Below, one piece after another: positions 9,580-53,783 of a DNA stretch of 64,000 bases. Location of the stretch: positions 186,001-250,000 of the IMG/VR virus record IMGVR_UViG_3300032268_000832, one strand, 5' to 3'. Position 1 is the stretch's first letter. The number at the start of each line of letters is the position of its first letter. The position numbers and the translations under genes are program-made. A model generated the notes under the pieces. It ran no database searches. It saw nothing but the letters and a program-made list of their open reading frames with translations, and was not told where the DNA came from.

Positions 9580-9586
9580 CTAACAT

Positions 9587-9659: not shown

Positions 9660-9717
9660 CTGGAGACTTTTTTGTACTTTTCAGTTTTCTGAGATATTTA
9701 TTATTAAAGAAATTGAA

Positions 9718-10377: not shown

Positions 10378-10384
10378 AATACAT

Positions 10385-10472: not shown

Positions 10473-10473
10473 C

Positions 10474-10528
10474 TAGAAGAATAGATTCAGCAATTTAATG
10501 TTTAGGATACAAAAAAGACTATTCTGTA
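10474..10528 (+). ncRNA. Y-RNA-like element copy 4 (minimal)
   Basis: AGAATAG / CTATTCT-G stem then ATTCAGCAA. Confidence 0.5.
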
Positions 10529-10597
10529 AAAATTAAAACCCATAGCAATATGGGTTTTTCTATTTAAACTAATAATTAATTTAAAACACAAAAACCA

Positions 10598-11275: not shown

Positions 11276-11359
11276 TAAAAAAAAAAGGGTGAAATTTTCA
11301 CCCTTTTTTATTTGTACATAAGTAAAAAAATCGGTATCTTTGTAAAAAAATCTTTAAAT

Positions 11360-11554
11360 ATGAAAAACAATCCTTTAATTATTGTTATTTTTTGGATATT
11401 ATGGGTGGTTGGGTTAGATTACATTTCCGAGTATGTGATTAGCAGACCAACAGACGGTTCTGTTCAATTCTTATCCTTAATCTTTGTATTAGCAATGACT
11501 GTATTGTTAGTTAAAAAGACTTATTTGTATATTATTAACAATTTAAATAAATAA
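11360..11554 (+). CDS. small two-helix membrane protein
   Basis: hydrophobic segments. Confidence 0.55.
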   Translation: MKNNPLIIVIFWILWVVGLDYISEYVISRPTDGSVQFLSLIFVLAMTVLLVKKTYLYIINNLNK

Positions 11555-11559
11555 AAACC

Positions 11560-12498: not shown

Positions 12499-12551
12499 AC
12501 CAAGAACTCTACTGTGAAAGGTAGGGTTTCTTCTAATTTAAAAAAATAGAT

Positions 12552-13055
12552 ATGTTTAAAAAAATGCTTATTATAGGTCACGCTCGCCACGCGAAAGATA
12601 CGTTAGCTGAAATATGGCGAGATAATTATGGTCTTACGTTCAAATCATCATCACAAGCTGCTGCTGATATTTTCTTGTATGACACCTTAAAAGACAAGTA
12701 TGGTTATACAACACCAGAAGAATGTTTCGAGGATAGAGTAAACCACAGAGCTGAATGGAAACAATTGATTTGTGATTACAACAAAGACGACAGAGCTAGA
12801 TTAGCTAAGAGTATACTAGAACAATCAGATTGTTATGTAGGTATGCGTGATAGAGAAGAAATAAACGAGTGTATGCGCCAAGGGTTGTTTGATATAATCA
12901 TTTGGGTTGACGCATCAGAAAGATTACCGTTGGAAGACCCTTCATCATTTGATATTGACAAAACATGCGCTGATATCATCATTGAAAACAATGGAACTTT
13001 CGAAGAATTCAAAGAGAAAGTTTTAAGACTTGGAAAATTTTTGAAAAAAAATTAG
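12552..13055 (+). CDS. P-loop deoxynucleotide monophosphate kinase-like protein
   Basis: IIGHARHAKDT P-loop, ADIIIENNG. Confidence 0.65.
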   Translation: MFKKMLIIGHARHAKDTLAEIWRDNYGLTFKSSSQAAADIFLYDTLKDKYGYTTPEECFEDRVNHRAEWKQLICDYNKDDRARLAKSILEQSDCYVGMRDREEINECMRQGLFDIIIWVDASERLPLEDPSSFDIDKTCADIIIENNGTFEEFKEKVLRLGKFLKKN

Positions 13056-13105
13056 AAAAAAAGTTGCACAATTAAAAAAGTTGTGGTATCTTTGTATCAC
13101 AATAA

Positions 13106-13178
13106 GGTTCTATAGTATTAACGTGAATACGCCCGCCTCTAAAACGGAGAAATATCGGTTCGAGTCCGATTAGAACTA
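13106..13178 (+). tRNA. amber suppressor tRNA (anticodon CTA)
   Basis: acceptor GGTTCTA/TAGAACT, loop CTCTAAA, T arm ATCGG-TTCGAGT-CCGAT; anticodon stem only 3 bp. Confidence 0.7.
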
Positions 13179-13238
13179 CAAACACTTTACATTTTTTAGA
13201 AAAATGATATATTTATAAACAAAAAACAAATAGAACAA

Positions 13239-13589
13239 ATGACTTAGATTAACAATCAAAAATTAAGAGTTGTCACAAGACGTGACTTACCAATTTCCAC
13301 ACAAGCGGTGCAATCGGCACACGCAGCCATTGATTTTCAACATGACCACCCAGAAGTGGCATCACAATGGCAAACAAAATCAAATTATTTAGCATTATTA
13401 ACTGTCGCTGATGAAGAAGAGTTAATCAAATTGATTACCAAAGCTATCTTTATTGGTATCAAACACACTATTTTCCGTGAACCAGATTTGGGTAACGTGA
13501 TTACAGCAGTAGCCTTTGAACCAACAGACGCGGCTAAAAAACTTACCAGTTCATGTCCGTTATTAGGAAAGGAGGTTCAATATGCTTAA
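13239..13589 (+). CDS. peptidyl-tRNA hydrolase Pth2-like protein with in-frame TAG at codon 3 (13245)
   Basis: MT*INNQKLRVVTRRDLPISTQAVQSAHAA...FREPDLGNVITAVAF. Confidence 0.75.
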
Positions 13590-13839
13590 TATTCAATCCA
13601 GAACAGAAATCATTTTCCATTTTAACAAAATGTCTTTACAAGACCCTAGTATACCTATGTGGGTAATCAAAGCCAAGGGTGAAACATATTATGTAGACCA
13701 CGTAGATATGGAATCTGGTGTAGGTTTTACTACCAAAGAAACACCAGACAACCCAAGTACAAAGGGTTCTATTAAATTCAAAGCTAAATTGAAAATTGAA
13801 AAAATAAACAATAGGGTAGTCGCAACGATTTACCCTTAA
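13582..13839 (+). CDS. hypothetical protein
   Basis: ORF track. Confidence 0.6.
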   Translation: MLNIQSRTEIIFHFNKMSLQDPSIPMWVIKAKGETYYVDHVDMESGVGFTTKETPDNPSTKGSIKFKAKLKIEKINNRVVATIYP

Positions 13840-13845
13840 TTAAAT

Positions 13846-13915
13846 GGTTTGGTGACCGAGTGGTAGGTACAGTTCCGCAAGAACTGGCACGGTGGTTCGA
13901 ATCCACCCCAAACCT
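13846..13915 (+). tRNA. tRNA-Cys(GCA), atypical C33
   Basis: GGTTTGG/CCAAACC, CAGTT-CCGCAAG-AACTG, U73. Confidence 0.75.
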
Positions 13916-14049
13916 CTAATAATAATTTAAAACATAGAAATCATGATGTAGATTGCAAGACCACCGAATTAAGTTTATTATAACTTGGACATTATCTTGG
14001 ACAACTTGTCCAACTACTAACAATTATAATAAATTTAAAAAGAAAACAA

Positions 14050-14463
14050 ATGAAAACACAAGAACAAGTTCAACAAGAATTGAATACATATTTAAACAAA
14101 ACAGCACAACACGTGTTTGTAAAAACAATAAACGATAAAAAAGTAGTATTTAGACTTTTTGATGTTAAAACAAAAGATGGTAAAACCTATTGGATGGGTT
14201 TATTATTAAATGAAGATTTAACCCCAAACAGAATAAACATCCAAGTCAATATTGATGGTTGGTCAAGTTCTAACGCTAAGAATGGTCTTAAACACCTTAT
14301 GTTTTTGAATCAAGGTTACATGAGTGTTAGACTTAAAAGAAAAACACAACCTATCATTGATAGTTTAAAAGAAATTGTTGCGTCAATGGACGCTCCAGAT
14401 GTAAATTGGAGAGTGATGGAACAATACAAAAAAGATTTAATTGAAAAGCTACATGTAGCGTAA
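14050..14463 (+). CDS. hypothetical protein
   Basis: ORF track; terminator follows. Confidence 0.65.
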   Translation: MKTQEQVQQELNTYLNKTAQHVFVKTINDKKVVFRLFDVKTKDGKTYWMGLLLNEDLTPNRINIQVNIDGWSSSNAKNGLKHLMFLNQGYMSVRLKRKTQPIIDSLKEIVASMDAPDVNWRVMEQYKKDLIEKLHVA

Positions 14464-14513
14464 TAAATTAGGGCCACTGAGGCCCTTTTTTATTTTATTG
14501 AATATTTATAGGT

Positions 14514-15725
14514 ATGAAAGATACGATTAAACAATTACTTAGAGAGGCATTAGGTGTGCCAGACAATATAACAAATGTTGGTGTTGAAGTTTATAATAAA
14601 GTTTTAGATTATTTAAACCAACAACCAGCAGATATGCTTATGACTGATATTCCAAATAAAATTAAAATAACTGGTGAGTATAAAGTTGGTGATGCTGTGT
14701 TTAATAAAGTTAAACTTAAATTAAATACTAAGGTATTAAACCGTCATGACAACAATTTACCTAAAGTTTATGGTATGGCTTTTAGAAATAAAAGCGAGTT
14801 TGATGTTCAATTATTTAGAAATATTTCTGTAGGTAAAGACGGCTCTGTTTATCTATTCATTGAAATTGCAATAAACAAAACAACAACGGTAGAAGAAGTA
14901 TTAGAAGAATTTGCTAAAGAAAAGATTAAATTAACAATGGCTTTAACTCATGAGTTAAAACATGCTTACGATATGTATAAAAAGAAAGTGTCTAAAATAC
15001 ATAGAAATAGTGAATATGGTGTTTTTACCGATATGAGAACAAACATACCACCTTTGGACCAATTTATACATGATTTATATTTTACTACTAATGCTGAAAA
15101 TTTAGTTAGAGCAACAGAAGTAGCATCAAATATAGAACAAGTAGGTATCACCAAAAAACAATTTTTAAATTTTTTGGAAACTGATGACACGTATCAAAAC
15201 CTAAAAAGGATAAATTCATTCTCTTTAGATGAGTTGATAAATGAATTGAAACAACACAAAGATAGGATAATTAAGGTGTTGGATGATGCTGGGTACAAAA
15301 TACCTTCATCTGAGGATGATTTAATTAGTCTTTTATTGAAACTTACATATGAATTAATACAAAAGCGTAAATTTGAGTCTTATAAAGCCGCTGCTAGATT
15401 AAATGTCCCTTTTGTTGCTATGTTATTACAAGGTGATTCGGTTTCTAGAAAAGAAATTAAAGATTATGTTGACACTTTAAAACGATTTGATAATTATCAA
15501 CAGTTCTTCAATTATGAACAAAAAAACTTTAAAACCGTAACCGATAAGTTATTAAAGAAAATTCATAAATTATACGCTATGGCAAAAGATGATAACCAGT
15601 CAGATGTAATGCAAAAAATAAACGCTAGAACAACCAATGAATCTATTTTAGATTGGGATTTATACTACGAAGCAAATAACATAAGTGAAACAAACCCTTT
15701 TAAAAAAAATGAAGAATTTAATTAA
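14514..15725 (+). CDS. IKQLLRE-motif protein with HExxH motif
   Basis: MKDTIKQLLRE; THELKHAYD. Confidence 0.7.
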   Translation: MKDTIKQLLREALGVPDNITNVGVEVYNKVLDYLNQQPADMLMTDIPNKIKITGEYKVGDAVFNKVKLKLNTKVLNRHDNNLPKVYGMAFRNKSEFDVQLFRNISVGKDGSVYLFIEIAINKTTTVEEVLEEFAKEKIKLTMALTHELKHAYDMYKKKVSKIHRNSEYGVFTDMRTNIPPLDQFIHDLYFTTNAENLVRATEVASNIEQVGITKKQFLNFLETDDTYQNLKRINSFSLDELINELKQHKDRIIKVLDDAGYKIPSSEDDLISLLLKLTYELIQKRKFESYKAAARLNVPFVAMLLQGDSVSRKEIKDYVDTLKRFDNYQQFFNYEQKNFKTVTDKLLKKIHKLYAMAKDDNQSDVMQKINARTTNESILDWDLYYEANNISETNPFKKNEEFN

Positions 15726-17637
15726 ACAATTACTTAGAGAAAACTTACAATTGGCTGATAAGGTTTATTTCAATTCTGGGAAGTTATCACCTAGAGTTAG
15801 AGAAATAATTACACGTATCACCAATGGTGACCCATATACCAAAATAATGACTGACATCTACTATACGATGTTAACCAATAATCATAGAACTGGTGAATGG
15901 GCTCTTAAACAATTAGACCCAGAACATCAAGAAACTGAAAAACCAGAAAATGATGTGATGAGTACACCTGATTTGCAAAAATTAAGACCAATATACAACC
16001 AATTAAAAGAATACGATAAAAATGTATTCCCCATCAAAGGTTTCAACATCAATGGTGTTCAAGATACAAATGATTTAATTAGAGGGTTGATTCAGCGTGA
16101 AAAAATACTTAATATCTTTAATGAATGGCCTTCAATAGCTAAACGTAATATGAAAACTGATATTAGAACTGAAAGAGATAGCTCCCAAATGAATAGTTAT
16201 AGAGATGATTTAGAACATGCTGATGCGCATATTAGTCAGTTGAATAATAGAAACGAAGAAGCTAGAAACAGCATATTAAGAAAGATGTTTACTAACAACA
16301 CAACACTTGATGATGTATTGGATTTTGTACAAGAGAAAGAAAACTTACTTGGTGGTGTTGACTTAACTAGAAAACAAATAGGACAAATACTTAAACATGA
16401 TAAAGAAAACTATGACGAATTAAAAGTTAAATATAATAAAGGTAACATAATGATTATTGAAGTTTCTGGTCCAAATGGGATAAAAGAAATTGGTTGTAAT
16501 TCTCTTTGGTGTTTTACTTATAATAGAAAAGGTGGTTCTACTAATTGGGAAGATTGGTCTAGGAATTCAACTAACGGATATTGTTATATAATAATAGATT
16601 TTTCAGAGCCTTCAGATTCTGAATTGTTTATGCATGTCCTTACAAAACCACTTAGATATGATTATTCAGATTATGGTGAAACTGGTGATGAAAGACTTTA
16701 TACTATGTCAAACAGAGATATTCATGATGACGATGAGGACTATGGTAGAAGTGTTAACGAATACATAGAGTACCTAATTGATTTACCAACTGCAATGAAA
16801 GTAATGAACTTTGGAGTAAAAAAACCAAAAGAAAAAAAGAAAAAACAAAAATTCGTTGACCCTAACCAGTTATCATTAGATTTAAACGAAGTAAAAAATA
16901 CACTCAGAGAAGGTTTGATAACTGAAGCTCTTTACAATATAGACGATGATGTAGATTTAATTTATGATAATTTTTTTGCTGAGGATTTAGATACATTACT
17001 TAAAACTAGAAAATTAAATAATAGTATGTTTTATAACACAATTATAAGCACTAGTATTTTAAGTAATCCATTATGTGTTAAAGCAAATGAAATAAACCCT
17101 TGTAAAATATTAATTAACTTTGACAACAATATTTATAACCCAAACACTAAAACAATTTCAATTACAGCATCTAAAAGAGCGTTAGAATTTATAAAAGATA
17201 ACAATAATGATTTTGATAAAGCTTTAGATAATTTAGAATGGGATGATGCTAAAAAAATAAAATCAGATTTATCGGAAGAAAAAATCAAAGGTTCTATACA
17301 TCATGAATTAACACATTGGTTAGATGATACGTTTAACAACAATAGAATAAAAAGAGCTGTTGATAAATTCATCAAAAAAAATAAAAAAGTTGGTAGAAAT
17401 AACATACCAATTGATGCTGATACTTTAGAAATACAAGCACAAATACATAATATTCATCAATTAAAAAGAAAATATCAAGATGTTTGGGATAATTTAACTT
17501 TTAATGAAATGATGAATATGTCAGTAACGATTAGAGTTGTTTACAATAATTTACCTTTAAAATATAGAAACAGATGGGTTCGAGATTTAAAAACTAGAAT
17601 GTATCGTGAAGGCTTGTTAGGTAAAAATATGTATTAA
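15709..17637 (+). CDS. IKQLLRE-motif two-module protein with HExxH motif
   Basis: MKNLIKQLLRE; internal VKNTLREGLITE; HHELTH. Confidence 0.7.
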   Translation: MKNLIKQLLRENLQLADKVYFNSGKLSPRVREIITRITNGDPYTKIMTDIYYTMLTNNHRTGEWALKQLDPEHQETEKPENDVMSTPDLQKLRPIYNQLKEYDKNVFPIKGFNINGVQDTNDLIRGLIQREKILNIFNEWPSIAKRNMKTDIRTERDSSQMNSYRDDLEHADAHISQLNNRNEEARNSILRKMFTNNTTLDDVLDFVQEKENLLGGVDLTRKQIGQILKHDKENYDELKVKYNKGNIMIIEVSGPNGIKEIGCNSLWCFTYNRKGGSTNWEDWSRNSTNGYCYIIIDFSEPSDSELFMHVLTKPLRYDYSDYGETGDERLYTMSNRDIHDDDEDYGRSVNEYIEYLIDLPTAMKVMNFGVKKPKEKKKKQKFVDPNQLSLDLNEVKNTLREGLITEALYNIDDDVDLIYDNFFAEDLDTLLKTRKLNNSMFYNTIISTSILSNPLCVKANEINPCKILINFDNNIYNPNTKTISITASKRALEFIKDNNNDFDKALDNLEWDDAKKIKSDLSEEKIKGSIHHELTHWLDDTFNNNRIKRAVDKFIKKNKKVGRNNIPIDADTLEIQAQIHNIHQLKRKYQDVWDNLTFNEMMNMSVTIRVVYNNLPLKYRNRWVRDLKTRMYREGLLGKNMY

Positions 17638-17674
17638 TTTTTGTTTTTTAAAAATAAAATTGTATCTTTGCAAA

Positions 17675-18847
17675 ATGAAAACACAGATAAAACAAATACT
17701 TAGAGAAGGACTTACAATGGAAGAAAGAATTAAATTTGACTTCCAAATACCATCAGATATAATTGAAATCCAAAAGGTGTTCACCAAAAACGGATATAAA
17801 TTATATGTGGTTGGTGGAGCTGTGCGCGATGCCCTATTAGGAAAAACACCTAAGGATTTTGATTTAGCTACAGATGCTGTTCCTGACAAAGTAGAAGAAA
17901 TGATGCAAGATGCTGGGTTCAGAACCCTACCAACTGGTAAAGCTTTTGGTGTTATCAACGTATTCACTGACCAAGGAGAATATGAAGTAGCTACGTTTCG
18001 AAATGATATTGGTTCTGGTAGAAGACCAGACAGTGTTGAATTTACAAATATAGATGGTGATGTAAAAAGACGTGACCTTACAATCAACGCTTTGTTCTAT
18101 GATATAGACACAAAAGAAATAGTTGACCTTGTAGGTGGTGTAGACGACCTTAAAAACGGTGTTGTGAGAACTGTTGGTGCCCCAGAAGATAGATTTGGTG
18201 AAGATAGGCTTAGAATTCTAAGAGCGATTAGATTTGCTGGTAGATTTGGTTCTGATTTAGACCCAGCAACAGATATGGCATTACAAAAAGATGCAAGTCT
18301 TGAAGGTATTTCTGGTGAGCGTATTAGAGATGAGTTTATCAAAGGATTAATCTCAGCTAAGTCATTTAAAAAATACATGGAAATGTTAGATAAATATGAC
18401 TTATTCAAATGGGTGTTACCTAACATGTTATTGAATAAAAAATCATACATGAGAAACTCTGGTAAAGTTGACAATTACATTGTTGAATTGGCTAGTTTAT
18501 TAAAAGATAACGAAATTGATTTGTTAAGAAGAAAATTAAATGAATTGAAATACTCAGCAGACGAAATAAAAGCGATTGTGTTTTTAATTTCATTCTTAAA
18601 ATTGAGTGTTGATACCGCATACTTGTTGAAAAAAATGCAACAAACTGCTGGTGTTTCTGATAAACAAATTAGAGAATTTGGTGAGAAAGAAAACATACCA
18701 GAAAAATTGTTAAACGCTTTTGAACAATATAGACTTAGCGTTAGCGGACCAGAGGCTATGGAAAAATTTGATTTGAAACCAAGTCCTGAGTTGGGAAAAG
18801 CCATCCAAAAAATGGAAACAGCTAACTTTGAAAAATTATTAAAATAA
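17675..18847 (+). CDS. cca: CCA-adding tRNA nucleotidyltransferase
   Basis: VGGAVRD, DFDLAT, RRDLTINA, EDRLRILRAIRF, ERIRDE. Confidence 0.92.
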   Translation: MKTQIKQILREGLTMEERIKFDFQIPSDIIEIQKVFTKNGYKLYVVGGAVRDALLGKTPKDFDLATDAVPDKVEEMMQDAGFRTLPTGKAFGVINVFTDQGEYEVATFRNDIGSGRRPDSVEFTNIDGDVKRRDLTINALFYDIDTKEIVDLVGGVDDLKNGVVRTVGAPEDRFGEDRLRILRAIRFAGRFGSDLDPATDMALQKDASLEGISGERIRDEFIKGLISAKSFKKYMEMLDKYDLFKWVLPNMLLNKKSYMRNSGKVDNYIVELASLLKDNEIDLLRRKLNELKYSADEIKAIVFLISFLKLSVDTAYLLKKMQQTAGVSDKQIREFGEKENIPEKLLNAFEQYRLSVSGPEAMEKFDLKPSPELGKAIQKMETANFEKLLK

Positions 18848-21160: not shown

Positions 21161-22354
21161 ATGAATAGAAAAAATAAAATATCCATTATTAACAAAGCTA
21201 ATATTTTATTAGAAAATAAATTCATTGAAGAAAAAATTGGTAAAGACTCAATGATTAATGATTTAACAAACAAGGTTAATGATTTAACAAAAAGAGTAAA
21301 TTCAGGTGAAAATTTAGAAAATGAACTTAAAAATGTAATAAATAAGTTAATATTAGTTTTAAAAGACGATTCTATTGATGAAAATAAAATAGTTGAAGGG
21401 GTATTTGATTATGCTAAAATTGCTTTAATAAGTGGTTTGATGGCTTTAGGTATGACTAATACACAAGCACAATCAAAAATAGATAACTCAATTAATATAT
21501 CTTCTGTAAATAAAAGTGCTGAAGTTGAGTTATCGGATAATATAAAATTAGATGTTTCTAGAACTATTAACAGGTATCTTAATCAAGATAAAGGTGTTAA
21601 CCAAATAATTATTGAGATTGTTGGTAAAGCTTCCCTAGTAACACCACCAGCAGGTATGACAAATGAAGAATTAGCAACAAAAAGAGCGGAAAAAGCTAAA
21701 GAATATATTGAAGCTAAATATGGTAATAAAGTAATTGTGTCAAATATCACGACTAAAATAGGTGATACCAAATATATTAGTGGTTTGGATTCAAAAGATT
21801 CTCAAAAGTTTACGAAAGAACAAGGTGTTTCTATAAACATTGTTGCTAGTTTTGGTGGTAATTTAAATGGTTATTTTAATTCGATTATTATCTCCCCAGG
21901 TAAGAATCCAGATAATTTATTAGTATACAATTCTAGAGGTGAATTAATTACCAGTACTGGTTTTTTTGGTGATGGTGACAAATACCATCCACATTATTTG
22001 GTGTCAACAACGATGGGAATTGTTAAAGATAATGAATTGGGAAATAATACTAAACTTTTTGAAGGTACTTTAGATGAATTAAAAACTTTATTGACACAAC
22101 CCTTAGCGGATAACGACACTTATTATAATAATGCTTTAAAAATATTAATAGATAGGTATAATAACAATAAACCTATTTACTTATATGACTTACACACCCC
22201 AAAGACTTTAGATTTAAGTGATTTAGGTTTTGTAACGATTAAAGTTGTAACCAGTGATAAAGATACTGAGGGGAGTGTTATAATTAATGGTAGTAATAAT
22301 CAAAAAATTAAAGGAATTTACAACAAAAAAGGTTTTTCATTTTATGGTTTTTAA
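21161..22354 (+). CDS. protein with hydrophobic segment and OmpA-C-like region
   Basis: NEELATKRAEKAKEYI resembles the OmpA NxxLSxxRA motif; KANILLE N-terminus. Confidence 0.55.
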   Translation: MNRKNKISIINKANILLENKFIEEKIGKDSMINDLTNKVNDLTKRVNSGENLENELKNVINKLILVLKDDSIDENKIVEGVFDYAKIALISGLMALGMTNTQAQSKIDNSINISSVNKSAEVELSDNIKLDVSRTINRYLNQDKGVNQIIIEIVGKASLVTPPAGMTNEELATKRAEKAKEYIEAKYGNKVIVSNITTKIGDTKYISGLDSKDSQKFTKEQGVSINIVASFGGNLNGYFNSIIISPGKNPDNLLVYNSRGELITSTGFFGDGDKYHPHYLVSTTMGIVKDNELGNNTKLFEGTLDELKTLLTQPLADNDTYYNNALKILIDRYNNNKPIYLYDLHTPKTLDLSDLGFVTIKVVTSDKDTEGSVIINGSNNQKIKGIYNKKGFSFYGF

Positions 22355-22428
22355 AAAAAAACCATAAAACATTTTTTTATTAAAAAAAAATGTATATCTT
22401 TGCACTATTAATTTTAAAACAAAAAACC

Positions 22429-22785
22429 ATGAAAGTATTTTTTATTGCTTTTTTAATGTTTTCTTTATCGATTAAAGCCCAAAAACTAAAGAATGAATTA
22501 TTTACGTTTAATGTTGATTATACAAACAAAGAGTTTATAGTTAGGGTTGGTGATATAGATGAAAATAAATCACAAGTTGAAGTTGAAATTAAGTGTTCTA
22601 AAATAATTCTAGACTATAAAAAGGAAAAACATTTTGTGGAAGTTTTTAATATAAAACAACATGTTAATAATAGCAATGTTTTTTTTGGTGGTAAATTGAT
22701 TGAAGGTGAATATGTTATAACGTTAACATATGTTGAAAATGGTAAAAAAATAAAAAAAATAGAAAAAAAATTAATAAAAACTTGA
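22429..22785 (+). CDS. putative secreted protein
   Basis: signal peptide MKVFFIAFLMFSLSIKAQ. Confidence 0.6.
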   Translation: MKVFFIAFLMFSLSIKAQKLKNELFTFNVDYTNKEFIVRVGDIDENKSQVEVEIKCSKIILDYKKEKHFVEVFNIKQHVNNSNVFFGGKLIEGEYVITLTYVENGKKIKKIEKKLIKT

Positions 22786-22866
22786 CTTGTATTAAAATAG
22801 TTAGTATATTTGCATAACTTTTTAAAACAAGGATATATTTATAAACAAATACAAAAATAAAACAAA

Positions 22867-22968
22867 ATGAGAACAATTAACATACATATGATATCGATTT
22901 CGAATTGGAGACGCAATAGTCACCAAATGTCGGGTATGTCTAATTGCCAAGGTGGGACTGAAGTATAA
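22867..22968 (+). CDS. attenuator leader peptide 1 MRTINIHMISISNWRRNSHQMSGMSNCQGGTEV
   Basis: codons 4-19 are all read by tRNAs of the downstream cluster; contains antiterminator GTCGGGT (22929-22935). Confidence 0.85.
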   Translation: MRTINIHMISISNWRRNSHQMSGMSNCQGGTEV

Positions 22969-22993
22969 TTCAGAAACACATATAACAATACAC

Positions 22994-23027
22994 AACCCGA
23001 CTAGTTAAAAGCTTAGTCGGGTTTTTT
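22994..23027 (+). terminator. attenuator terminator 1
   Basis: AACCCGACTA..TAGTCGGGTT plus T-run. Confidence 0.85.
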
Positions 23028-23038
23028 ATTTTAAAACT

Positions 23039-23230
23039 ATGGGTGAATTAGTAAGAAAATTAGGAACTGAAAAAAGTGTCAACTTAGTTAAAGACTTTAA
23101 CCTAATAGTTGACAAGTACAGAAAAATAGCAGATGCCAGTGGATATCACGGAGAGCTAAAATTTCAAAAAGAAGGTGGGTTCACCGTAATATTTGTAGAT
23201 ATTAAAACGGACGATAATTTGGAGGAGTAA
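23039..23230 (+). CDS. hypothetical protein
   Basis: ORF track. Confidence 0.55.
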   Translation: MGELVRKLGTEKSVNLVKDFNLIVDKYRKIADASGYHGELKFQKEGGFTVIFVDIKTDDNLEE

Positions 23231-23308
23231 AGCGTAATGGTTGACCGCTCTAGTCTTGAAAACTAGTCTCGCGAAAGTGGGTTGCAGGTTCGAGTCCTGT
23301 CTCCTCCG
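23221..23308 (+). tRNA. tRNA-Ser(TGA)
   Basis: GGAGGAG/CTCCTCC, CTAGT-CTTGAAA-ACTAG, long variable arm. Confidence 0.9.
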
Positions 23309-23378
23309 CAAAAATTTACACATGCGGTGAATAGTAAAAATTATCCGCACTTTTACAAAATGTAATATATTTATTAGT

Positions 23379-23813
23379 ATGGAAATAAATATAAACGTTA
23401 AAAGGTGTTCCAAATGTCAAGAAGAAAAAAGTATTGATTTATTTGGTGTAAAAAATTATAATAAAGATGGTTTAAATCATTATTGTAAAGAATGTGAAAA
23501 TAATAGGAATAAGGTTAGATATCAAGACCCTATTCAAAAAGAAAAAATAAAGTATAATTCAATTTTAAGAAATTATGGTCTTACTAAAGAAGAATATTTA
23601 TTAAAATTAGATAAACAAGAACATAAATGTTCTATCTGTAGTGATGTTTTAAAAAATGATAAAAAAACACACGTAGACCATTGTCATTTGACTGGTGTTG
23701 TTAGAGATATTTTATGTGATAAATGTAATAAATTATTGGGTAACGTAAAAGAAGATGTTAATTACCTAAAAAATTTAATAAATTACATTGAAAAATATTC
23801 ACCGCAAAAATAA
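23379..23813 (+). mobile_element. endonuclease VII-like homing endonuclease
   Basis: CSIC..HVDHCHLTGVVRDILCDKCNKLLG; inserted in the tRNA array. Confidence 0.8.
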
Positions 23814-23866
23814 GGCGAATAGAAAAGATAATCACCGCAAAAATGCGGTGATTGTAAATTAAACAT

Positions 23867-23939
23867 GGTGGCTATAGTGTAACGGTTAACACGCTAGATT
23901 GTGGTTCTGGAAATGGGAGTTCGATTCTCCTTAGTCACC
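23867..23939 (+). tRNA. tRNA-His(GTG)
   Basis: G-1, CTAGA-TTGTGGT-TCTGG, C73. Confidence 0.9.
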
Positions 23940-23946
23940 CTTTTAT

Positions 23947-24018
23947 ACTTCGCTGGTGAAATGGCTATCATCTTGGTCTCCAAAACCAAGGTTTCAGGTT
24001 CGAGTCCTGAGCGTAGTG
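23947..24018 (+). tRNA. tRNA-Trp(CCA)
   Basis: TTGGT-CTCCAAA-ACCAA. Confidence 0.9.
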
Positions 24019-24027
24019 CTAAAACAT

Positions 24028-24100
24028 AGGCGTGTGGTGAAATTGGTTATCACGCAAGACTGATACTTTTGTATTTCGAGTTCGAGTCTCGACATGCCTA
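24028..24100 (+). tRNA. tRNA-Ile(GAT)
   Basis: CAAGA-CTGATAC-TTTTG. Confidence 0.85.
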
Positions 24101-24105
24101 CAAAC

Positions 24106-24189
24106 TGTGATGTGGATGAATGGTTTAGTCACCAGCCTGATACGCTGGGTGTTTATAACACAATGTGGGTTCGAGTCCCACCGTCACAA
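24106..24189 (+). tRNA. tRNA-Ile(GAT) with long variable arm
   Basis: CCAGC-CTGATAC-GCTGG; variable hairpin GTGTT-TAT-AACAC. Confidence 0.8.
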
Positions 24190-24191
24190 CT

Positions 24192-24425
24192 ATGAAAAGA
24201 CAATATAGTGAAAATGAAAAAGGATTGGTAGAAGCCATAGTTGGATTGTTCATTTTGCTTCCTAACCCACAATTGAAGGGTAAAGAACAAGAAATAATGA
24301 AAATTGCTTTTAAAATTCTGGACGAAATGTTAGATGAAGACTTTGAACCAGAAGAAAATGAAGATGAAGACGATGATGATGGATACGAAGATTACATCAA
24401 GTATATTGTTGAAAAACGTAAATAA
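24192..24425 (+). CDS. acidic hypothetical protein
   Basis: ATG at 24192 after the tRNA. Confidence 0.55.
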   Translation: MKRQYSENEKGLVEAIVGLFILLPNPQLKGKEQEIMKIAFKILDEMLDEDFEPEENEDEDDDDGYEDYIKYIVEKRK

Positions 24426-24499
24426 GGTCCTCTGGCGCAATTGGTTAGCGCAGCGCGCTCATAACGCGACGGTTTCGGGTTCGAGTCCCGAGGGGACCA
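24426..24499 (+). tRNA. tRNA(CAT), elongator Met or Ile2
   Basis: GCGCG-CTCATAA-CGCGA, paired 1-72. Confidence 0.85.
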
Positions 24500-24604
24500 C
24501 ACCCTATCAAATGGTGTAACCACGGGTAAAAACAGCAACGCTGGCGAATGGACCAGAGGCGCACCGTAATTGTGGTACTCGGTGTATTGATAAAAATATA
24601 AAAT

Positions 24605-24690
24605 TCTGGTTTGGCCGAGTGGACGATGGCAGCAGACTGTTAATCTGCTAGGGTACACCCTCAACGTAGGTTCGAATCCTACAGCCAGAG
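24605..24690 (+). tRNA. tRNA-Asn(GTT) with long variable arm
   Basis: GCAGA-CTGTTAA-TCTGC; variable hairpin AGGGT-AC-ACCCT. Confidence 0.8.
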
Positions 24691-24757
24691 CGAAAATTTT
24701 TTTGTTAATCTATTGACTTTTTGTTCGAATTTATTATATTTATAATAAAAACAAATT

Positions 24758-25312
24758 ATGAAAGAAAAAATATTAGAATTAAGAAAAAAAGGTTTAAAAA
24801 TTGATGAAATTGTTAAAGAATTGGGTTGTGCTAAAAGCACCGTATCATATCACATTAACAATAATGGTTTAGGTGGTAAGGTTATAACTGACAGTTTAAT
24901 TTCTAAAATTAATGAGTATTATTTAACTCATAGTAAAGCTGAAACAGCTAAACATTTCGGGATTGGAGCTTCAACTGTAACTAAATATACTGAAAATAAA
25001 AGAGTCTATTTAAGCGAAGAAGAGAGGAAAGAAAAAGCTGTTAAAGCCGTTGTAAAAAGAAGACAAAAAGTCAAAGAGATGGCAGTTGAATACAAAGGCG
25101 GTTCATGTCAGAGATGTGGTTATAATAAATACATAGGTGCTTTAGAGTTTCACCATATGGACCCAAATGAAAAAGATTTTTTAATAAGCAGAAAAGGTCA
25201 TTGTACATCTTGGGAAAAAATAAAAAAAGAATTAGATAAATGTATTTTAGTTTGTGCTAATTGTCACAGAGAAGTACACGAAGAAGAAAGAAATAACAAG
25301 GGGCTGTCGTAG
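24758..25312 (+). mobile_element. HTH-HNH homing endonuclease
   Basis: CQRCGY..LEFHH..CILVCANCHREVH; sits between two tRNA-Asn genes. Confidence 0.85.
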
Positions 25313-25373
25313 CAGCGGTCTAATACGGAGGACTGTTAATCCTTTTACATGGGTTCGAATCCCATCGGCCCCG
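25300..25373 (+). tRNA. tRNA-Asn(GTT)
   Basis: GAGGA-CTGTTAA-TCCTT. Confidence 0.85.
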
Positions 25374-25387
25374 CAAAATAAAAGAAG

Positions 25388-25540
25388 ATGGAAAAGACAA
25401 GTGAAGCTGATATGCAGCGTCTTTATGATTACTTGGATAAAATGGGTGTATCTTATACGGTAGACCGAAATCCAAGTCCAGAAAAGATTGCTAGAATCAA
25501 AGCACAAATTGAAAAGAACAAAAAAATAAGAATGTGTTAA
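25388..25540 (+). CDS. 50-aa hypothetical protein (not in track)
   Basis: manual translation MEKTSEADMQRLYDYLDKMG... Confidence 0.5.
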   Translation: MEKTSEADMQRLYDYLDKMGVSYTVDRNPSPEKIARIKAQIEKNKKIRMC

Positions 25541-25640
25541 TGCTGATAAACTACAACAGCACCAGACGAAAAACTGGCGTGGAGCATGGGACTAGTTAAC
25601 CACCACAATTGTAGGAGAATACCCTACCACATTCACAAAT

Positions 25641-25713
25641 GCCGAGGCTTATAGGAAAAGAGCCATCCCTCATAAAGATGGTCAAGTCGGTTCGACTCCG
25701 ATACTCGGTACCA
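25641..25713 (+). tRNA. tRNA-Met(CAT), atypical D arm
   Basis: loop CTCATAA, T arm GTCGG-TTCGACT-CCGAT, encoded CCA. Confidence 0.7.
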
Positions 25714-25718
25714 AAATT

Positions 25719-25791
25719 GGCTCTATCGTTCAACTGGATAGGACCTCGGTCTACGAAATCGAAAATACAGGTTCGAATCCTGTTAGAGTCA
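25719..25791 (+). tRNA. tRNA-Arg(ACG)
   Basis: TCGGT-CTACGAA-ATCGA. Confidence 0.9.
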
Positions 25792-25840
25792 CAACATCAG
25801 TCAAATCTATAATTTATATGTATCATTTGGCTAACAATAT

Positions 25841-25913
25841 GCCTCCATAGCATAAATGGAAATGCAACATCCTTCTAAGATGTCCAATCGGGGTTCGAAT
25901 CCCTGTGGGGGTA
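25841..25913 (+). tRNA. tRNA-Arg(TCT)
   Basis: ACATC-CTTCTAA-GATGT. Confidence 0.9.
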
Positions 25914-26117
25914 CAAATAAAATAGCAATCAAGGTTTGTTTCACCTTCAAGATATTCCTGAAAAGAAACTAGGTGTGTTGATAGGGGTAGCCTCCCAACA
26001 GTGACTGATTAAATTCAAGGTAGATACGGACTGGTACAGTGGTGACTTACACACGGAATTCCACTAATCCCTTTGTAGCCCGTCACGACCCAAGGGCGGG
26101 ATTGTTATTTTATTTAT

Positions 26118-26204
26118 GGAGAGTTGCCAGAGTGGTAATGGAGCGGATTGCTAATCCGTGGTCGTTAGTTCGGCCCATGGGTTCGAATCCCATACTCTCC
26201 ACCA
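26118..26204 (+). tRNA. tRNA-Ser(GCT)
   Basis: GCGGA-TTGCTAA-TCCGT, long variable arm, encoded CCA. Confidence 0.9.
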
Positions 26205-27761: not shown

Positions 27762-28700
27762 ATGAAAAAAGAAATAAGAACAATATTAAGAGAAGGTATG
27801 TTAAAGAATTCATTAGGGGTTGCGGTTTCAAGACCAGACCAAGTGCTTATCGTGATGCGTGGTATACCAGGCTCGGGTAAATCAACAAAAGCCAAAGAAC
27901 TAGTAGGTGAAGGAGTAATCCATTCAACTGATGCTGTTATAGAGTCACAAGGTGATTACAACAAATTCTTTCAATTAATGTTTGAATCTAAAGACTTTAC
28001 ACCATTGTCAAGAGCTCACTCTACCAATTTAAAAAACGTTGTTGGTTCGTTAAAAGAAGGTGTTTCACCAGTTATCCTAGATAACACAAACATCAAACAA
28101 AACGAATCAAAGGCCGCTATTAAGGCTGCTTTGGAAATGGGGTTGGCTGACAACAACATAAAGTTTGTGGATATAGGTACAGCTGGTCTTACAGCTGAGC
28201 AATTAGCTGAAAGAAACACTCATGGTGTACCGCTTGAAAAAATACAATCAATGATTGAATCACACAAGGGTCAAGGTCCATTAACGCTTAAAAGCGTTTT
28301 AGAATCGAAAGACATGTACAAAGAATCAAACATTTTGTATTCTGCTGTTGTATTGGATGGTGGGTCTAGAGCAGCTTTGTTGTCAAGAATTGAGGGTATG
28401 ATACCTGATGGTTGGAAAGTAATTGCGCACCACATGACTATAGTGTTTGGTAAACCAGTACCAAACCAAGAAGATTTAGGTAAAGAAGTTACTTTGTATG
28501 TTGAAGCTATAGGGATTAGCGATATGGCTATGGCTGTTAGGGTTGAAGGTTATCCATCAACCAATGCGATTCCACATATAACAATTGCGATAAACCCAGA
28601 TGGTGGAAAACCAGTGATGTCGAATGATATCACCAAATGGCAAAAAATAAAGAACTTTGCCATTAAGGGTAGAGTTACTGAAATTAAGAAAGGGTCGTAA
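27762..28700 (+). CDS. polynucleotide kinase-like P-loop fused to 2H phosphoesterase (RNA end healing)
   Basis: GIPGSGKST, ILDNTN, RNTHGVP; HMT and HIT 2H motifs. Confidence 0.85.
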   Translation: MKKEIRTILREGMLKNSLGVAVSRPDQVLIVMRGIPGSGKSTKAKELVGEGVIHSTDAVIESQGDYNKFFQLMFESKDFTPLSRAHSTNLKNVVGSLKEGVSPVILDNTNIKQNESKAAIKAALEMGLADNNIKFVDIGTAGLTAEQLAERNTHGVPLEKIQSMIESHKGQGPLTLKSVLESKDMYKESNILYSAVVLDGGSRAALLSRIEGMIPDGWKVIAHHMTIVFGKPVPNQEDLGKEVTLYVEAIGISDMAMAVRVEGYPSTNAIPHITIAINPDGGKPVMSNDITKWQKIKNFAIKGRVTEIKKGS

Positions 28701-51894: not shown

Positions 51895-51945
51895 AAAAAG
51901 TTGCAAAAAAACTTGACTTGTATTAAAACAGTTCGTATATTTGCA
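51895..51945 (+). promoter_or_regulatory. promoter of the Cys/Val/Leu tRNA operon
   Basis: AAAGTTGCAAAAAACTTGACTTGTATTAAAACAGTTCGTATATTTGCA, near-identical to 53493-53543. Confidence 0.75.
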
Positions 51946-51982
51946 TCGTATTAAATTTTAACGAAAAAAGAAACAAAACAAA

Positions 51983-52063
51983 ATGAGAAATACTTTTAAC
52001 ATATTAGTCCTTTTAAGCTTATGCTTGCTAGTGGTAAACACAGCAGGGCTTTGCGTATGTTAA
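51983..52063 (+). CDS. attenuator leader peptide 2 MRNTFNILVLLSLCLLVVNTAGLCVC
   Basis: 10 of codons 8-18 are Leu/Val/Cys; antiterminator GGGCTTT (52046-52052). Confidence 0.85.
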   Translation: MRNTFNILVLLSLCLLVVNTAGLCVC

Positions 52064-52093
52064 ACTCATCTGAATAAGATAAGTATCTCTCAC

Positions 52094-52125
52094 AAAAAGC
52101 CCATCCTAACCAGATGGGTTTTTTT
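52094..52125 (+). terminator. attenuator terminator 2
   Basis: AAAAAGCCCATC-CTAACCA-GATGGGTTTTTTT. Confidence 0.85.
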
Positions 52126-52138
52126 ATTGAATAATAAT

Positions 52139-53492: not shown

Positions 53493-53543
53493 AAAAAAGT
53501 TGCAAAAAAACTTGACTTGTATTAAAACAGTTCGTATCTTTGC
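53493..53543 (+). promoter_or_regulatory. promoter of the Phe/Glu/Asp/Ala tRNA operon
   Basis: TTGACTTGTATTAAAACAGTTCGTATCTTTGCA. Confidence 0.75.
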
Positions 53544-53623
53544 ACTATAATTAAAAACAAAGAAAAAAAATGACTTTTTAAAAAAAGTCGCATATTTATA
53601 AACAAATACAAAAAGAAAACACA

Positions 53624-53713
53624 ATGAGAACTTTAACTAACATATTTGATTTCGCATTTTTTGCAGCCGAGGAGGATTACTCTTTCGGAAGGTCAAACAC
53701 TGTCATAAGTTAA
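53624..53713 (+). CDS. attenuator leader peptide 3 MRTLTNIFDFAFFAAEEDYSFGRSNTVIS
   Basis: codons 8-18 are all Phe/Asp/Ala/Glu; antiterminator AGGTCAAAC (53690-53698). Confidence 0.88.
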   Translation: MRTLTNIFDFAFFAAEEDYSFGRSNTVIS

Positions 53714-53738
53714 CGTTTAAATTAACGATATAAATGAT

Positions 53739-53768
53739 AAGTCTGACCTAATAAGTCAGACTTTTTTT
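53739..53768 (+). terminator. attenuator terminator 3
   Basis: AAGTCTGAC-CTAATAA-GTCAGACTTTTTTT. Confidence 0.85.
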
Positions 53769-53783
53769 ATGCAATAAATAATT

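What the first reader, a model, noticed from the sequence alone, without database searches (positions are those of the whole stretch)
22867..26204. Attenuator 1: 16 consecutive codons cover the Ser/His/Trp/Ile/Met/Asn/Arg cluster
Codons 4-19 (ATT AAC ATA CAT ATG ATA TCG ATT TCG AAT TGG AGA CGC AAT AGT CAC) can all be read by the 12 downstream tRNAs. Both Ser types (TCG and AGT) and both Arg types (AGA and CGC) are sampled. ATA fits if the CAT tRNA at 24426 is Ile2. GTCGGGT (22929) can pair with ACCCGAC (22995) of the terminator. A single leader would act as a seven-amino-acid OR gate.
Basis: partly seen in the sequence, partly recalled or inferred. Interest (0 to 1): 0.9.

Follow-up and report, generated by a model that had tools for sequence, protein, structure and literature searches.

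The report
Leader-peptide switches controlling phage tRNA genes
A giant freshwater phage places a tiny test gene, built from just the codons that the following tRNAs read, in front of each of its tRNA gene clusters. The tRNA genes are therefore probably switched on only when ribosomes run short of those tRNAs, which reuses the textbook amino-acid attenuator for tRNA supply in a way I could not find described.

Summary

- **The unit:** At 22867-22968 a 33-codon ORF lies behind a promoter and 25 nt ahead of a strong intrinsic terminator. Codons 4-19 all encode S, H, W, I, M, N or R, the amino acids of the tRNA genes that follow.
- **Chance:** This is the only run of 16 or more such codons in any frame of the 306-kb genome (about 0.006 expected).
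- **Paralogues:** Three paralogous units precede the other tRNA clusters (C/V/L, F/E/D/A, P/K/G/Q/Y/T). The four leaders partition all 20 amino acids, and the leader-by-cluster table is diagonal.
- **Conservation:** At least 54 related viral contigs carry the motif. Composition is kept while residue order and synonymous codon families change. In relatives, 230 of 237 downstream anticodons are sampled.
- **Antiterminator:** The in-ORF segment 22929-22935 covaries with the terminator's 5' arm (0 of 500 shuffles), supporting an antiterminator.
- **Read-through:** Terminators end a median 20 nt before the first tRNA. Metatranscriptome contigs cover the leader and cross the terminator.

The best reading is trp/his-type ribosome-mediated attenuation used as a feedback sensor of tRNA supply. 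Nine literature searches found no such report. Translation, stalling and regulated read-through are untested.

The parts
22782..22812 (+). Promoter of attenuator 1, of the Bacteroidota type (TTG, 20 nt, TAnnTTTG).
   Evidence: The motif occurs 87 times on the + strand of the genome against about 17 in Markov simulations. One copy lies 70-112 nt upstream of each of the four leaders. It is repeated almost identically before the other leaders.
22833..22846 (+). Second conserved box (ATATATTTATAAAC) shared by the leaders, the tmRNA gene and the PTH2 gene. It is possibly a second promoter's -7 box.
   Evidence: It is conserved in the paralogous leaders. An RNA-library fragment ends at 22853 with sequencing adapter attached, and contigs start at 22853-22863. 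The promoter role is an inference.
22867..22968 (+). Leader ORF of 33 codons.
   Evidence: Read. The A-rich, Shine-Dalgarno-free start context matches that of the phage's long ORFs. In the alignment of 15 relatives all gaps inside the ORF are multiples of three.
22876..22923 (+). Regulatory codons 4-19, all S, H, W, I, M, N or R. They include both Ser codon families and both Arg codon families.
   Evidence: In relatives 95% of residues here stay within the set, against 40% in the tail. TCG swaps with AGT or AGC while remaining Ser.
22880..22885 (+). Core of segment 1 (ACATAC), which pairs with GTATGT at 22934-22939 in the minimum-energy fold and so sequesters segment 2.
   Evidence: Seen in the folds. 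Both sides are nearly invariant in 37 relatives, so the helix is conserved but shows no covariation.
22929..22939 (+). Segment 2: GTCGGGT (the 5' strand of the antiterminator) overlapping GTATGT (the partner of segment 1).
   Evidence: In alignment A1 the helix is 93% paired, 4 of 7 pairs show changes on both sides, and the covariation score is 0.58 against 0.23 in shuffles, with 0 of 500 shuffles reaching it. RNAalifold predicts it independently. Swapping arms among 37 leaders gives P < 0.0002.
22994..23034 (+). Intrinsic terminator (stem 22994-23023 plus T-run). Its 5' arm is segment 3.
   Evidence: -15.7 kcal/mol. The stop-to-stem gap is 20-33 nt in all 45 units examined.
23039..23230 (+). 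A 63-codon ORF of unknown function between the terminator and the first tRNA. It is absent at this position in many relatives.
   Evidence: No Pfam match. It is covered by RNA contigs up to 23212.
23221..26204 (+). The regulated cluster: 11 tRNA genes plus one atypical CAU tRNA-like gene (25641-25710). Two homing-endonuclease ORFs (23379-23813 and 24758-25312) and small ORFs are interspersed.
51913..52131 (+). Attenuator for the Cys/Val/Leu cluster: promoter 51913-51943, 26-codon leader 51983-52063, segment 2 at 52045-52052, terminator 52094-52124. tRNA-Cys starts at 52139.
   Evidence: The fold switches as in the trp model when a ribosome masks codons 6-14: the terminator's 5' arm is paired with probability 0.04 without a ribosome and 0.58 with one.
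53512..53772 (+). Attenuator for the Phe/Glu/Asp/Ala cluster: promoter 53512-53542, 29-codon leader 53624-53713, candidate segment 2 at 53689-53699, terminator 53739-53763. tRNA-Phe starts at 53784.
   Evidence: The leader has a run of 11 F/D/A/E codons, the longest in the genome. The antiterminator is weaker in this class.

Best explanation
**What it is.** The unit is a ribosome-mediated (leader-peptide) transcription attenuator of the trp/his/ilv type, but it controls tRNA genes rather than biosynthetic enzymes.

**Proposed mechanism.**
1. Transcription starts at the promoter upstream of the leader, and a ribosome begins translating the 33-codon leader.
2. If every tRNA species needed for codons 4 to about 16 is plentiful, the ribosome moves on. 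Segment 1 re-pairs with segment 2 behind it, the terminator hairpin (segments 3 and 4) forms, and RNA polymerase stops before the tRNA genes.
3. If any of those tRNAs is scarce, the ribosome lingers on segment 1. Segment 2 (22929-22935) is then free to pair with the terminator's 5' arm (22995-23001), the terminator cannot form, and the cluster is transcribed.
4. The new tRNAs speed up leader translation and shut the unit off again, which is negative feedback.

**The whole system.** Four such units divide the 20 amino acids among them: SHWIMNR, CVL, FEDA and PKGQYT. Each samples nearly every anticodon of its own cluster, often through rare or wobble codons. Together they would act as an isoacceptor-resolved regulator of the phage's own tRNA pool.

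**Shown here by computation:**
- the anatomy of the units;
- the match between leaders and clusters, and its statistics;
- conservation across relatives;
- covariation of the antiterminator;
- the lack of room for a separate promoter;
- the presence of leader and read-through RNA in environmental RNA libraries.

**Inferred:** translation of the leader, stalling, regulated read-through, and the feedback loop.
For: **Leader-to-cluster match.**
- The leader-by-cluster table is diagonal: 22 of 32 residues (run of 16), 14 of 25, 12 of 28 (run of 11) and 21 of 32 (run of 17) on the diagonal, against runs of at most 4 off it.
- Three of the four leaders hold the single longest run among 1138 short ORFs, and the longest in any frame of the genome.
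- The four units are paralogous and each sits directly upstream of its cluster.

**Conservation in relatives.**
- There are 45 unique units in relatives found through flanking proteins, whose amino-acid identity to the window's copies falls as low as 40%.
- A leader motif search finds 54 viral contigs.
- Composition is conserved while order varies, for example FDFAFFAAEED, FEFDFFAAEAD and FDFAFEFAAEAD.

**Signs of translation.**
- Ser switches between the TCG and AGY codon families.
- ORF gaps come in threes.
- Start contexts match those of the phage's own genes.

**Sensing at tRNA level.**
- 230 of 237 distinct downstream anticodons are sampled by the cognate leader. That is 92-100% per class, against 34-61% for non-cognate leaders.
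- Adjacent AGA and CGY codons are kept in all 15 independently retrieved leaders.
- Regulatory codons are enriched in rare synonymous codons, P about 1e-4.

**The switch.**
- The antiterminator covaries.
- Segment 2 begins within nt 55-65 of the ORF in the 37 SHWIMNR-type leaders and lies at about nt 63-76 in this genome's four leaders.
- The leader's fold has a z-score of -5.15.
- The CVL and PKGQYT units switch as expected when a ribosome footprint is imposed.

**Dependence on read-through.**
- Terminators end a median 20 nt before the first tRNA, and in 24 of 44 cases no more than 21 nt before it.
- Freshwater metatranscriptome contigs cover 22839-23212 across the terminator, while the flanks 22300-22838 and 23259-23943 have about zero depth.

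**Context and control.**
- The phage carries a translation-maintenance island: tmRNA, ArfB-like, PTH2, CCA-adding enzyme, and a kinase plus CPD domain.
- As a negative control, the same scan on a distantly related 595-kb phage with 60 tRNAs finds nothing.

**Established knowledge.** his and trp attenuators respond to the speed of codon reading. The his leader is used as a codon-speed reporter (PMC4046918, abstract seen). Regulatory codons cognate to the operon's product are the defining logic of this mechanism (PMC1183508, abstract seen).
Against: - There is no direct evidence that the leader is translated or that read-through varies.
- For attenuator 1, equilibrium folding of the partial transcript forms the antiterminator even without a ribosome (0.81 against 0.65-0.68). 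Discrimination must then be kinetic, or rest on the segment 1:2 helix, which is conserved but shows no covariation.
- A stall at codons 17-19 would mask segment 2.
- The FEDA-class antiterminator is weak or inconsistent.
- Leader composition does not follow every gain or loss of tRNA genes. Some relatives lack detected Ser, Trp or Ile tRNAs yet keep those codons. Extra His, Pro or Cys tRNAs in some clusters are not sampled.
- The RNA contigs show read-through molecules but give no measure of terminated ones.
- The host is unknown. Bacteroidota is inferred only from promoter and start-site signals, and transcription-translation coupling in that host is assumed.
Confidence: 0.8

Rival explanations
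1. The hardware is the same, but the signal is amino-acid supply (tRNA charging) rather than tRNA amount. The phage would raise or tune tRNA transcription when the infected cell starves for particular amino acids.
For: Classical leader-peptide attenuators respond to charged tRNA. Sequence alone cannot separate charging from abundance. The match at amino-acid level fits both readings.
Against: The leaders sample isoacceptors, not only amino acids. Both Arg, both Ser and both Gly isoacceptors and three Leu isoacceptors are sampled, and both the Watson-Crick and the wobble codon of many tRNAs appear. Making more tRNA does not relieve amino-acid starvation, so the feedback loop would not close.
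Confidence: 0.1
2. The terminators are constitutive, leaky dosage setters, and the short ORFs serve another cis role such as keeping the 5' RNA unfolded, protecting it, or aiding processing. Nothing is sensed.
For: Read-through RNA is seen in environmental RNA libraries. For attenuator 1 the antiterminator is already favoured without a ribosome in equilibrium folds.
Against: This does not explain why each leader is built from the codons of its own cluster and not the others. It also does not explain why composition, but not order, is conserved, or why segment 2 covaries with the terminator arm.
Confidence: 0.07
3. The ORFs encode functional micro-proteins, or the match is chance.
For: The CVL leaders are hydrophobic and could resemble membrane peptides. 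The N-terminal residues (M, R/K, T/N, then N-I) are shared.
Against: About 0.006 or fewer chance runs are expected, and one was observed exactly at each site. Residue order is not conserved while composition is. The C-terminal halves diverge freely, tracking the terminator sequence.
Confidence: 0.02
4. The leader is a tRNA-binding riboswitch of the T-box type that needs no translation.
For: T-boxes also sense tRNAs and use a terminator/antiterminator choice.
Against: No T-box or any other Rfam family matches the leader, even at an E-value up to 1. A T-box reads a single specifier codon, whereas these leaders hold 11-17 mixed in-frame codons behind a start codon.
Confidence: 0.01

Closest known systems
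Leader-peptide attenuators of amino-acid biosynthesis operons (trpL, hisL, leuL, pheL; the multivalent ilvL with Leu/Val/Ile and thrL with Thr/Ile) in Enterobacteria. The details given here are from my own knowledge. The general logic is as stated in PMC1183508.
   Same: A promoter-proximal short ORF carries a run of regulatory codons, followed by an intrinsic terminator. An alternative antiterminator uses the terminator's 5' arm, and a 1:2 helix resets the switch. Rare codons are used. There is precedent for multi-amino-acid (multivalent) leaders.
   Different: The regulated genes are tRNA genes, the direct readers of the regulatory codons, and not enzymes. Up to seven amino acids and nine anticodons are combined in one leader. 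Four leaders together cover all 20 amino acids. Isoacceptors are sampled individually. The system is encoded by a phage, probably of Bacteroidota.
Attenuation control of the pheST operon (phenylalanyl-tRNA synthetase) through the pheM leader in E. coli (my own knowledge).
   Same: A translation-apparatus gene is controlled by a leader peptide whose codons report the availability of the cognate aminoacyl-tRNA.
   Different: That case has one amino acid and a protein product. Here the product is the tRNA itself, and many species are sensed together.
T-box riboswitches
   Same: They sense tRNA status and choose between a terminator and an antiterminator upstream of translation-related genes.
   Different: T-boxes bind uncharged tRNA directly, need no ribosome, and read a single specifier codon. 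No T-box match was found here.
tRNA gene clusters of large phages such as T4-like phages and huge phages, which are discussed in the literature as codon-usage compensation or as a counter to host tRNA-targeting defences.
   Same: These are large arrays of phage tRNA genes, interspersed with homing endonucleases and accompanied by tRNA repair or maturation enzymes.
   Different: Nine literature searches found no report of codon-matched leader ORFs or attenuators in front of such clusters. A distantly related 595-kb phage with 60 tRNAs lacks them.

Membership tests
Ribosome-mediated (leader-peptide) transcription attenuator | A short ORF with a credible start lies directly behind a promoter and ahead of the regulated genes. 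| tested here: met
   The ORF is 22867-22968 and the promoter 22782-22812. The start context matches that of the phage's own genes. RNA contigs start at 22839-22863.
Ribosome-mediated (leader-peptide) transcription attenuator | A run of regulatory codons is cognate to the product of the regulated genes, beyond chance. | tested here: met
   with the four-way specificity shown.
Ribosome-mediated (leader-peptide) transcription attenuator | An intrinsic terminator lies between the leader ORF and the regulated genes. | tested here: met
   It is present in all 45 units, with a stop-to-stem gap of 20-33 nt.
Ribosome-mediated (leader-peptide) transcription attenuator | A mutually exclusive antiterminator helix uses the terminator's 5' arm. 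| tested here: met
   Covariation. It is weak for the FEDA class.
Ribosome-mediated (leader-peptide) transcription attenuator | An anti-antiterminator (1:2) helix overlaps the regulatory codons, so that a stalled ribosome frees segment 2. | tested here: inconclusive
   It is predicted in the minimum-energy folds and both strands are nearly invariant, but there is no covariation. Imposing a ribosome footprint switches the CVL and PKGQYT units cleanly, and attenuator 1 less so.
Ribosome-mediated (leader-peptide) transcription attenuator | The regulated genes depend on read-through and have no promoter of their own. | tested here: met
   The median distance from terminator to first tRNA is 20 nt, and only 3 of 44 intervals hold a TAnnTTTG box. 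In this window's attenuator 1 the interval is 197 nt and contains an ORF.
Ribosome-mediated (leader-peptide) transcription attenuator | The leader is translated, and read-through rises when the cognate aminoacyl-tRNA is limiting. | not testable with these tools
   Only indirect signs are available: gaps in threes, Ser codon-family switches, and substitutions that stay within the set.
T-box riboswitch | A specifier loop and the conserved T-box sequence and structure, as in the Rfam model. | tested here: not met
   No match at the gathering score or at an E-value up to 1.

The most novel reading that the evidence does not exclude
The phage carries a complete, self-regulating replacement for the host tRNA pool. 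Four multi-input attenuators each measure decoding speed for every isoacceptor of one tRNA cluster, and together they cover all 20 amino acids. The phage's tRNAs would then be made on demand. That demand could arise when host tRNAs are cut by anticodon-nuclease defences, when they decay after host shut-off, or when they do not fit the phage's codon usage. Synthesis would switch off again once supply is restored. This would be the first attenuator whose regulated product is the very molecule that reads its regulatory codons.
Probability: 0.6. Interest if true: 0.92.

Novelty: new variant of a known kind. Interest (0 to 1): 0.9.

Why it matters
**Regulation of tRNA genes.** tRNA genes are generally thought to be controlled at their promoters, and phage tRNA clusters are treated as simply co-expressed cargo. 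A conserved, codon-matched attenuator in front of each cluster would show that a virus monitors translation speed codon by codon and adjusts its own tRNA supply by direct product feedback.

**Uses.**
- It gives a natural, modular sensor of isoacceptor availability that could serve as a reporter for tRNA depletion or for anticodon-nuclease activity.
- It bears on why large phages carry near-complete tRNA sets.
- It extends leader-peptide attenuation to a new class of targets, to phages, and probably to Bacteroidota.

**Testability.** The prediction can be tested with synthetic constructs even though the phage is uncultured.

Tried and rejected
- **DNA similarity to sequenced phages.** Megablast and blastn of the region against the phage collection found no relatives beyond short tRNA matches.
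- **AT-rich 17-mer scan.** A scan of viral contigs with a 17-mer from the 5' UTR was non-specific, giving more than 119 single hits. I dropped it in favour of protein-anchored retrieval and a leader-specific gapped pattern.
- **Typing the CAU tRNA.** Comparison with E. coli genomes gave no match. Comparison with phages gave only suggestive annotation.
- **Larger alignment.** In the 37-sequence MAFFT alignment one terminator subfamily is out of register. Column-based pairing therefore fell to 78%, and a slide of -1 scored nearly as well. I used per-sequence duplex energies with swapped arms instead.
- **Host assignment.** The genome-collection scan found the leader motif only on two small metagenome-assembled contigs, binned as Saccharibacteria and as a gammaproteobacterium. 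I read these as mis-binned phage DNA, so they give no host.
- **Nearest public record.** LR756511.1 (595 kb, 60 tRNAs) shares a protein but has no leader or terminator units. It served as a negative control.
- **Stop-codon recoding.** A crude test treating TAG or TGA as sense codons was uninformative.
- **Attenuators before other tRNAs.** I found none in front of the initiator-like CAU tRNAs, the amber suppressor, or the solitary Cys and Phe tRNAs. The suppressor and the solitary Phe have plain promoters.
- **Literature.** Nine searches found no prior description.

Full report
**Setting.** The window is bases 186001-250000 of a 306,463-bp viral record with 30.9% G+C. The record carries 38 tRNA genes and a tmRNA. 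It recurs in lake and other freshwater metagenomes.

The expression signals look like those of Bacteroidota:
- The promoter motif TTG-N19-21-TAnnTTTG occurs 87 times on the coding strand, against about 17 in simulations.
- Only 2% of long ORFs have a Shine-Dalgarno-like motif.
- Start codons sit in A-rich contexts.

The host assignment is an inference from these signals.

Downstream, from 23221 to 26204, lie 11 confident tRNA genes: Ser-UGA, His, Trp, two Ile-GAU, CAU, two Asn, Arg-ACG, Arg-UCU and Ser-GCU. There is also an atypical CAU tRNA-like gene at 25641-25710 that falls below the Rfam threshold. It is homologous to CAU tRNAs that hold the same position in relatives. With two CAU genes, both ATA and ATG can be served. 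The gene at 24426 resembles the CAU tRNA of T4-like phages.

The terminator (22994-23023 plus T-run, -15.7 kcal/mol) and the complementarity between 22929-22935 and 22995-23001 are real.

**Chance.**
- The 20 codons readable by the cluster make up 32% of all trinucleotides. A run of 16 is expected about 0.006 times in six frames of the genome.
- The leader is the only such run.
- Among 1138 short ATG ORFs its run of 16 is the maximum, and the next longest is 11.

**The decisive extension: four units.** A search of the phage's own genome with the leader DNA found paralogous copies of the promoter and 5' part directly upstream of the other tRNA clusters. Reading them showed three more units with the same design.

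| Leader | Position | Downstream tRNAs |
|---|---|---|
| MRNTFNILVLLSLCLLVVNTAGLCVC | window 51983-52063 | Cys, Val, Leu, Leu, Val, Leu |
| MRTLTNIFDFAFFAAEEDYSFGRSNTVIS | window 53624-53713 | Phe, an opal suppressor, Glu, Asp, Ala |
| MKTQTTYQTQYQPKGGKPFRSTGCVMFSDLTTI | genome 251079-251180, just outside the window | Pro, Lys, Lys, Pro, Gly, Gln, Tyr, Thr, Gly |

- The four amino-acid sets (SHWIMNR, CVL, FEDA, PKGQYT) do not overlap and together make up all 20 amino acids.
- The table of leader composition against cluster is diagonal.
- The FEDA and PKGQYT runs, of 11 and 17 codons, are also the longest in the genome.
- The tRNAs left outside this control are two initiator-like CAU tRNAs, an amber suppressor, a tRNA with a four-base anticodon, and second copies of Cys and Phe. 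The suppressor and the solitary Phe have plain promoters.
- Initiator and suppressor tRNAs are the kinds that an elongation sensor could not report on.

**Relatives.**
- Loci retrieved through two flanking proteins, independently of the leader sequence, gave 45 unique leader-terminator units in the four classes. The flanking proteins were as little as 40% identical.
- A leader-specific pattern found 54 viral contigs of up to 368 kb.
- Composition is conserved while residue order is not. Examples are FDFAFFAAEED, FEFDFFAAEAD and FDFAFEFAAEAD, and TTTTTYQTQYQPKGGKP, TTATYQTKQYQPKGGTP and TTTTYTGKQYPQGKQG.
- In SHWIMNR leaders 95% of residues in the regulatory part stay within the set, against 40% in the tail.
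- One Ser codon alternates between TCG and AGT or AGC, and gaps inside the ORF are multiples of three.

These are signatures of selection on what is decoded, not on a peptide sequence or on RNA alone.

**Isoacceptor sampling.**
- In 42 leader-cluster pairs, 230 of 237 distinct downstream anticodons are read by at least one codon of the cognate leader. That is 92-100% per class, against 34-61% for non-cognate leaders.
- The exceptions are mostly foreign additions: Pro or Cys tRNAs in a FEDA cluster, and suppressors.
- AGA followed by CGY (the two Arg isoacceptors) is kept in all 15 independently retrieved SHWIMNR leaders.
- GGC and GGG, three Leu codon types, and both the Watson-Crick and wobble codons of many tRNAs are used.
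- Regulatory codons are biased toward rare synonymous codons: mean usage is 0.41 against an expected 0.53, P about 1e-4.

This points to sensing of tRNA species rather than of amino acids.

**The RNA switch.**
- The leader folds far better than shuffled sequences do, with a z-score of -5.15.
- In the minimum-energy fold the regulatory codons (segment 1) pair with segment 2, and the terminator forms.
- In transcripts that end before the terminator's 3' arm, masking codons 6-14 with a ribosome footprint frees segment 2 to pair with the terminator's 5' arm. This works cleanly for the CVL and PKGQYT units.
- For attenuator 1 the antiterminator is favoured even without a ribosome, so kinetics or the 1:2 helix must provide the discrimination there.
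- Segment 2 begins within nt 55-65 of the ORF in the 37 SHWIMNR-type leaders and lies at about nt 63-76 in this genome's four leaders. The stop-to-terminator gap is 20-33 nt in all units.

The antiterminator is supported by covariation:
- In 15 leaders it is 93% paired, 4 of 7 pairs change on both sides, and the score is 0.58 against 0.23 in shuffles. No shuffle of 500 reached it, and slid controls scored at most 0.15.
- RNAalifold predicts this helix unprompted.
- Across 37 leaders at least eight compensated pairs of segment 2 and terminator arm occur. Swapping arms among leaders never reaches the observed mean energy in 5000 permutations.
- Cognate duplexes average -10.4 kcal/mol, against -7.1 for non-cognate ones.

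**Dependence on read-through, and RNA evidence.**
- The terminator stem ends a median 20 nt before the first tRNA. In 24 of 44 cases the distance is no more than 21 nt, which leaves no room for a promoter.
- In two freshwater metatranscriptomes, contigs cover 22839-23138 and 22853-23212. They run through the leader and the terminator up to the 5' end of tRNA-Ser.
- The neighbouring protein-coding stretches on both sides have about zero depth. Adapter sequence marks fragment ends at 22853 and 23138.
- This shows that the leader is transcribed from a start just upstream and that read-through molecules exist.
- Contig depth cannot give the terminated fraction, so regulated and constitutive read-through remain undistinguished.

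**Context.** The same region encodes:
- ClpP and a tmRNA;
- an ArfB-like rescue factor;
- a PTH2 peptidyl-tRNA hydrolase;
- a CCA-adding enzyme;
- a protein combining a kinase domain with a tRNA-ligase-type phosphodiesterase domain.

The phage evidently invests heavily in keeping translation running, which fits a regulated tRNA supply.

**Specificity control and limits.**
- The nearest public phage record is a 595-kb uncultured phage with 60 tRNAs that shares one protein. Under the same scan it shows no codon-matched ORFs or terminators.
- The system is therefore a property of this clade, not of tRNA-rich phages in general.
- Leader composition does not follow every gain or loss of tRNA genes in relatives.
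- The FEDA antiterminator is weak.

**Comparison with what is known.** In mechanism this is a leader-peptide attenuator, and most of the defining features that sequence can test are met. The 1:2 helix is inconclusive, and translation-dependent read-through is untestable here.

It differs from all the examples I know (trp, his, leu, phe, thr, ilv, pheST) in several ways:
- The regulated product is the tRNA that reads the regulatory codons.
- One leader combines up to seven amino acids.
- Four leaders partition the whole code.
- The system is phage-encoded.

It is not a T-box. Nine full-text searches found no description of attenuators or leader peptides controlling phage or cellular tRNA clusters. 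That is absence of evidence within the held library only.

**Verdict.** I rate it a new variant of a known kind of regulation, of high interest, with a confidence of about 0.8 in the attenuator mechanism.

Noticed in passing
window 24106-24190, 24605-24691, 52635-52723, 10385-10473 (compare 24028, 25300, 52916, 9587): Several tRNAs come in pairs: one canonical copy and one copy with a long, class-II-like variable arm. This holds for Ile-GAU, Asn-GUU, Val-UAC and an initiator-like CAU tRNA with a C1/A72 mismatch. Such an arm is unusual for these isoacceptors. Its meaning is unknown; altered synthetase recognition, nuclease evasion or a decoy role are possibilities.
   Followed up: partly
window 13106-13179 and 13239-13589: A PTH2 peptidyl-tRNA hydrolase gene (Pfam E = 7e-8) begins ATG ACT TAG directly after an amber-suppressor tRNA(CUA) gene. 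The conserved N-terminal part lies upstream of the first standard start codon (GTG at 13308). Expression may therefore need read-through of TAG by the phage's own suppressor. The gene's 5' UTR is paralogous to the leaders' UTR.
   Followed up: partly
window 25915-26117: A stretch of about 200 nt between tRNA-Arg(UCU) and tRNA-Ser(GCU) has the highest or near-highest depth of the region in three of the four libraries laid, two of them metatranscriptomes. It matches no Rfam family. It may be a stable structured RNA of unknown kind.
   Followed up: no
window 7478-18847 and 27762-28700: This is a translation-maintenance island. It holds ClpP, a tmRNA (8292-8645), an ArfB-like RF-1-domain protein (10874-11275), PTH2, a CCA-adding enzyme (17660-18847), and a protein combining a kinase domain with a tRNA-ligase phosphodiesterase domain.
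   Followed up: partly
window 53866-53941, 58432-58508; genome 286683-286759: An opal-suppressor tRNA(UCA) sits inside the Phe/Glu/Asp/Ala cluster, but TGA is not sampled by that cluster's leader. Two tRNA-like genes are called with four-base anticodons.
   Followed up: no
window 23379-23813 and 24758-25312: Endonuclease VII and HNH/HTH homing-endonuclease ORFs are inserted between tRNA genes. This may explain the rapid turnover of cluster content among relatives.
   Followed up: no
window 22833-22846, 8255-8268, 13205-13220, 53590-53605: A box resembling ATATTTATAAAC recurs about 20-25 nt before the leader start codons, the mature tmRNA 5' end and the PTH2 start. RNA fragment ends at 22853 suggest it belongs to a second promoter class.
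   Followed up: partly
genome 285822-286100 (outside the window): Another copy of the strong promoter is followed by roughly 250 nt of G+C-richer, apparently structured non-coding sequence, upstream of an odd tRNA-like gene.
   Followed up: no
loci L247, L248: The leader motif also occurs on contigs binned into a Saccharibacteria genome assembled from a metagenome and into a gammaproteobacterial genome assembly. These are most likely phage DNA binned by mistake.
   Followed up: no
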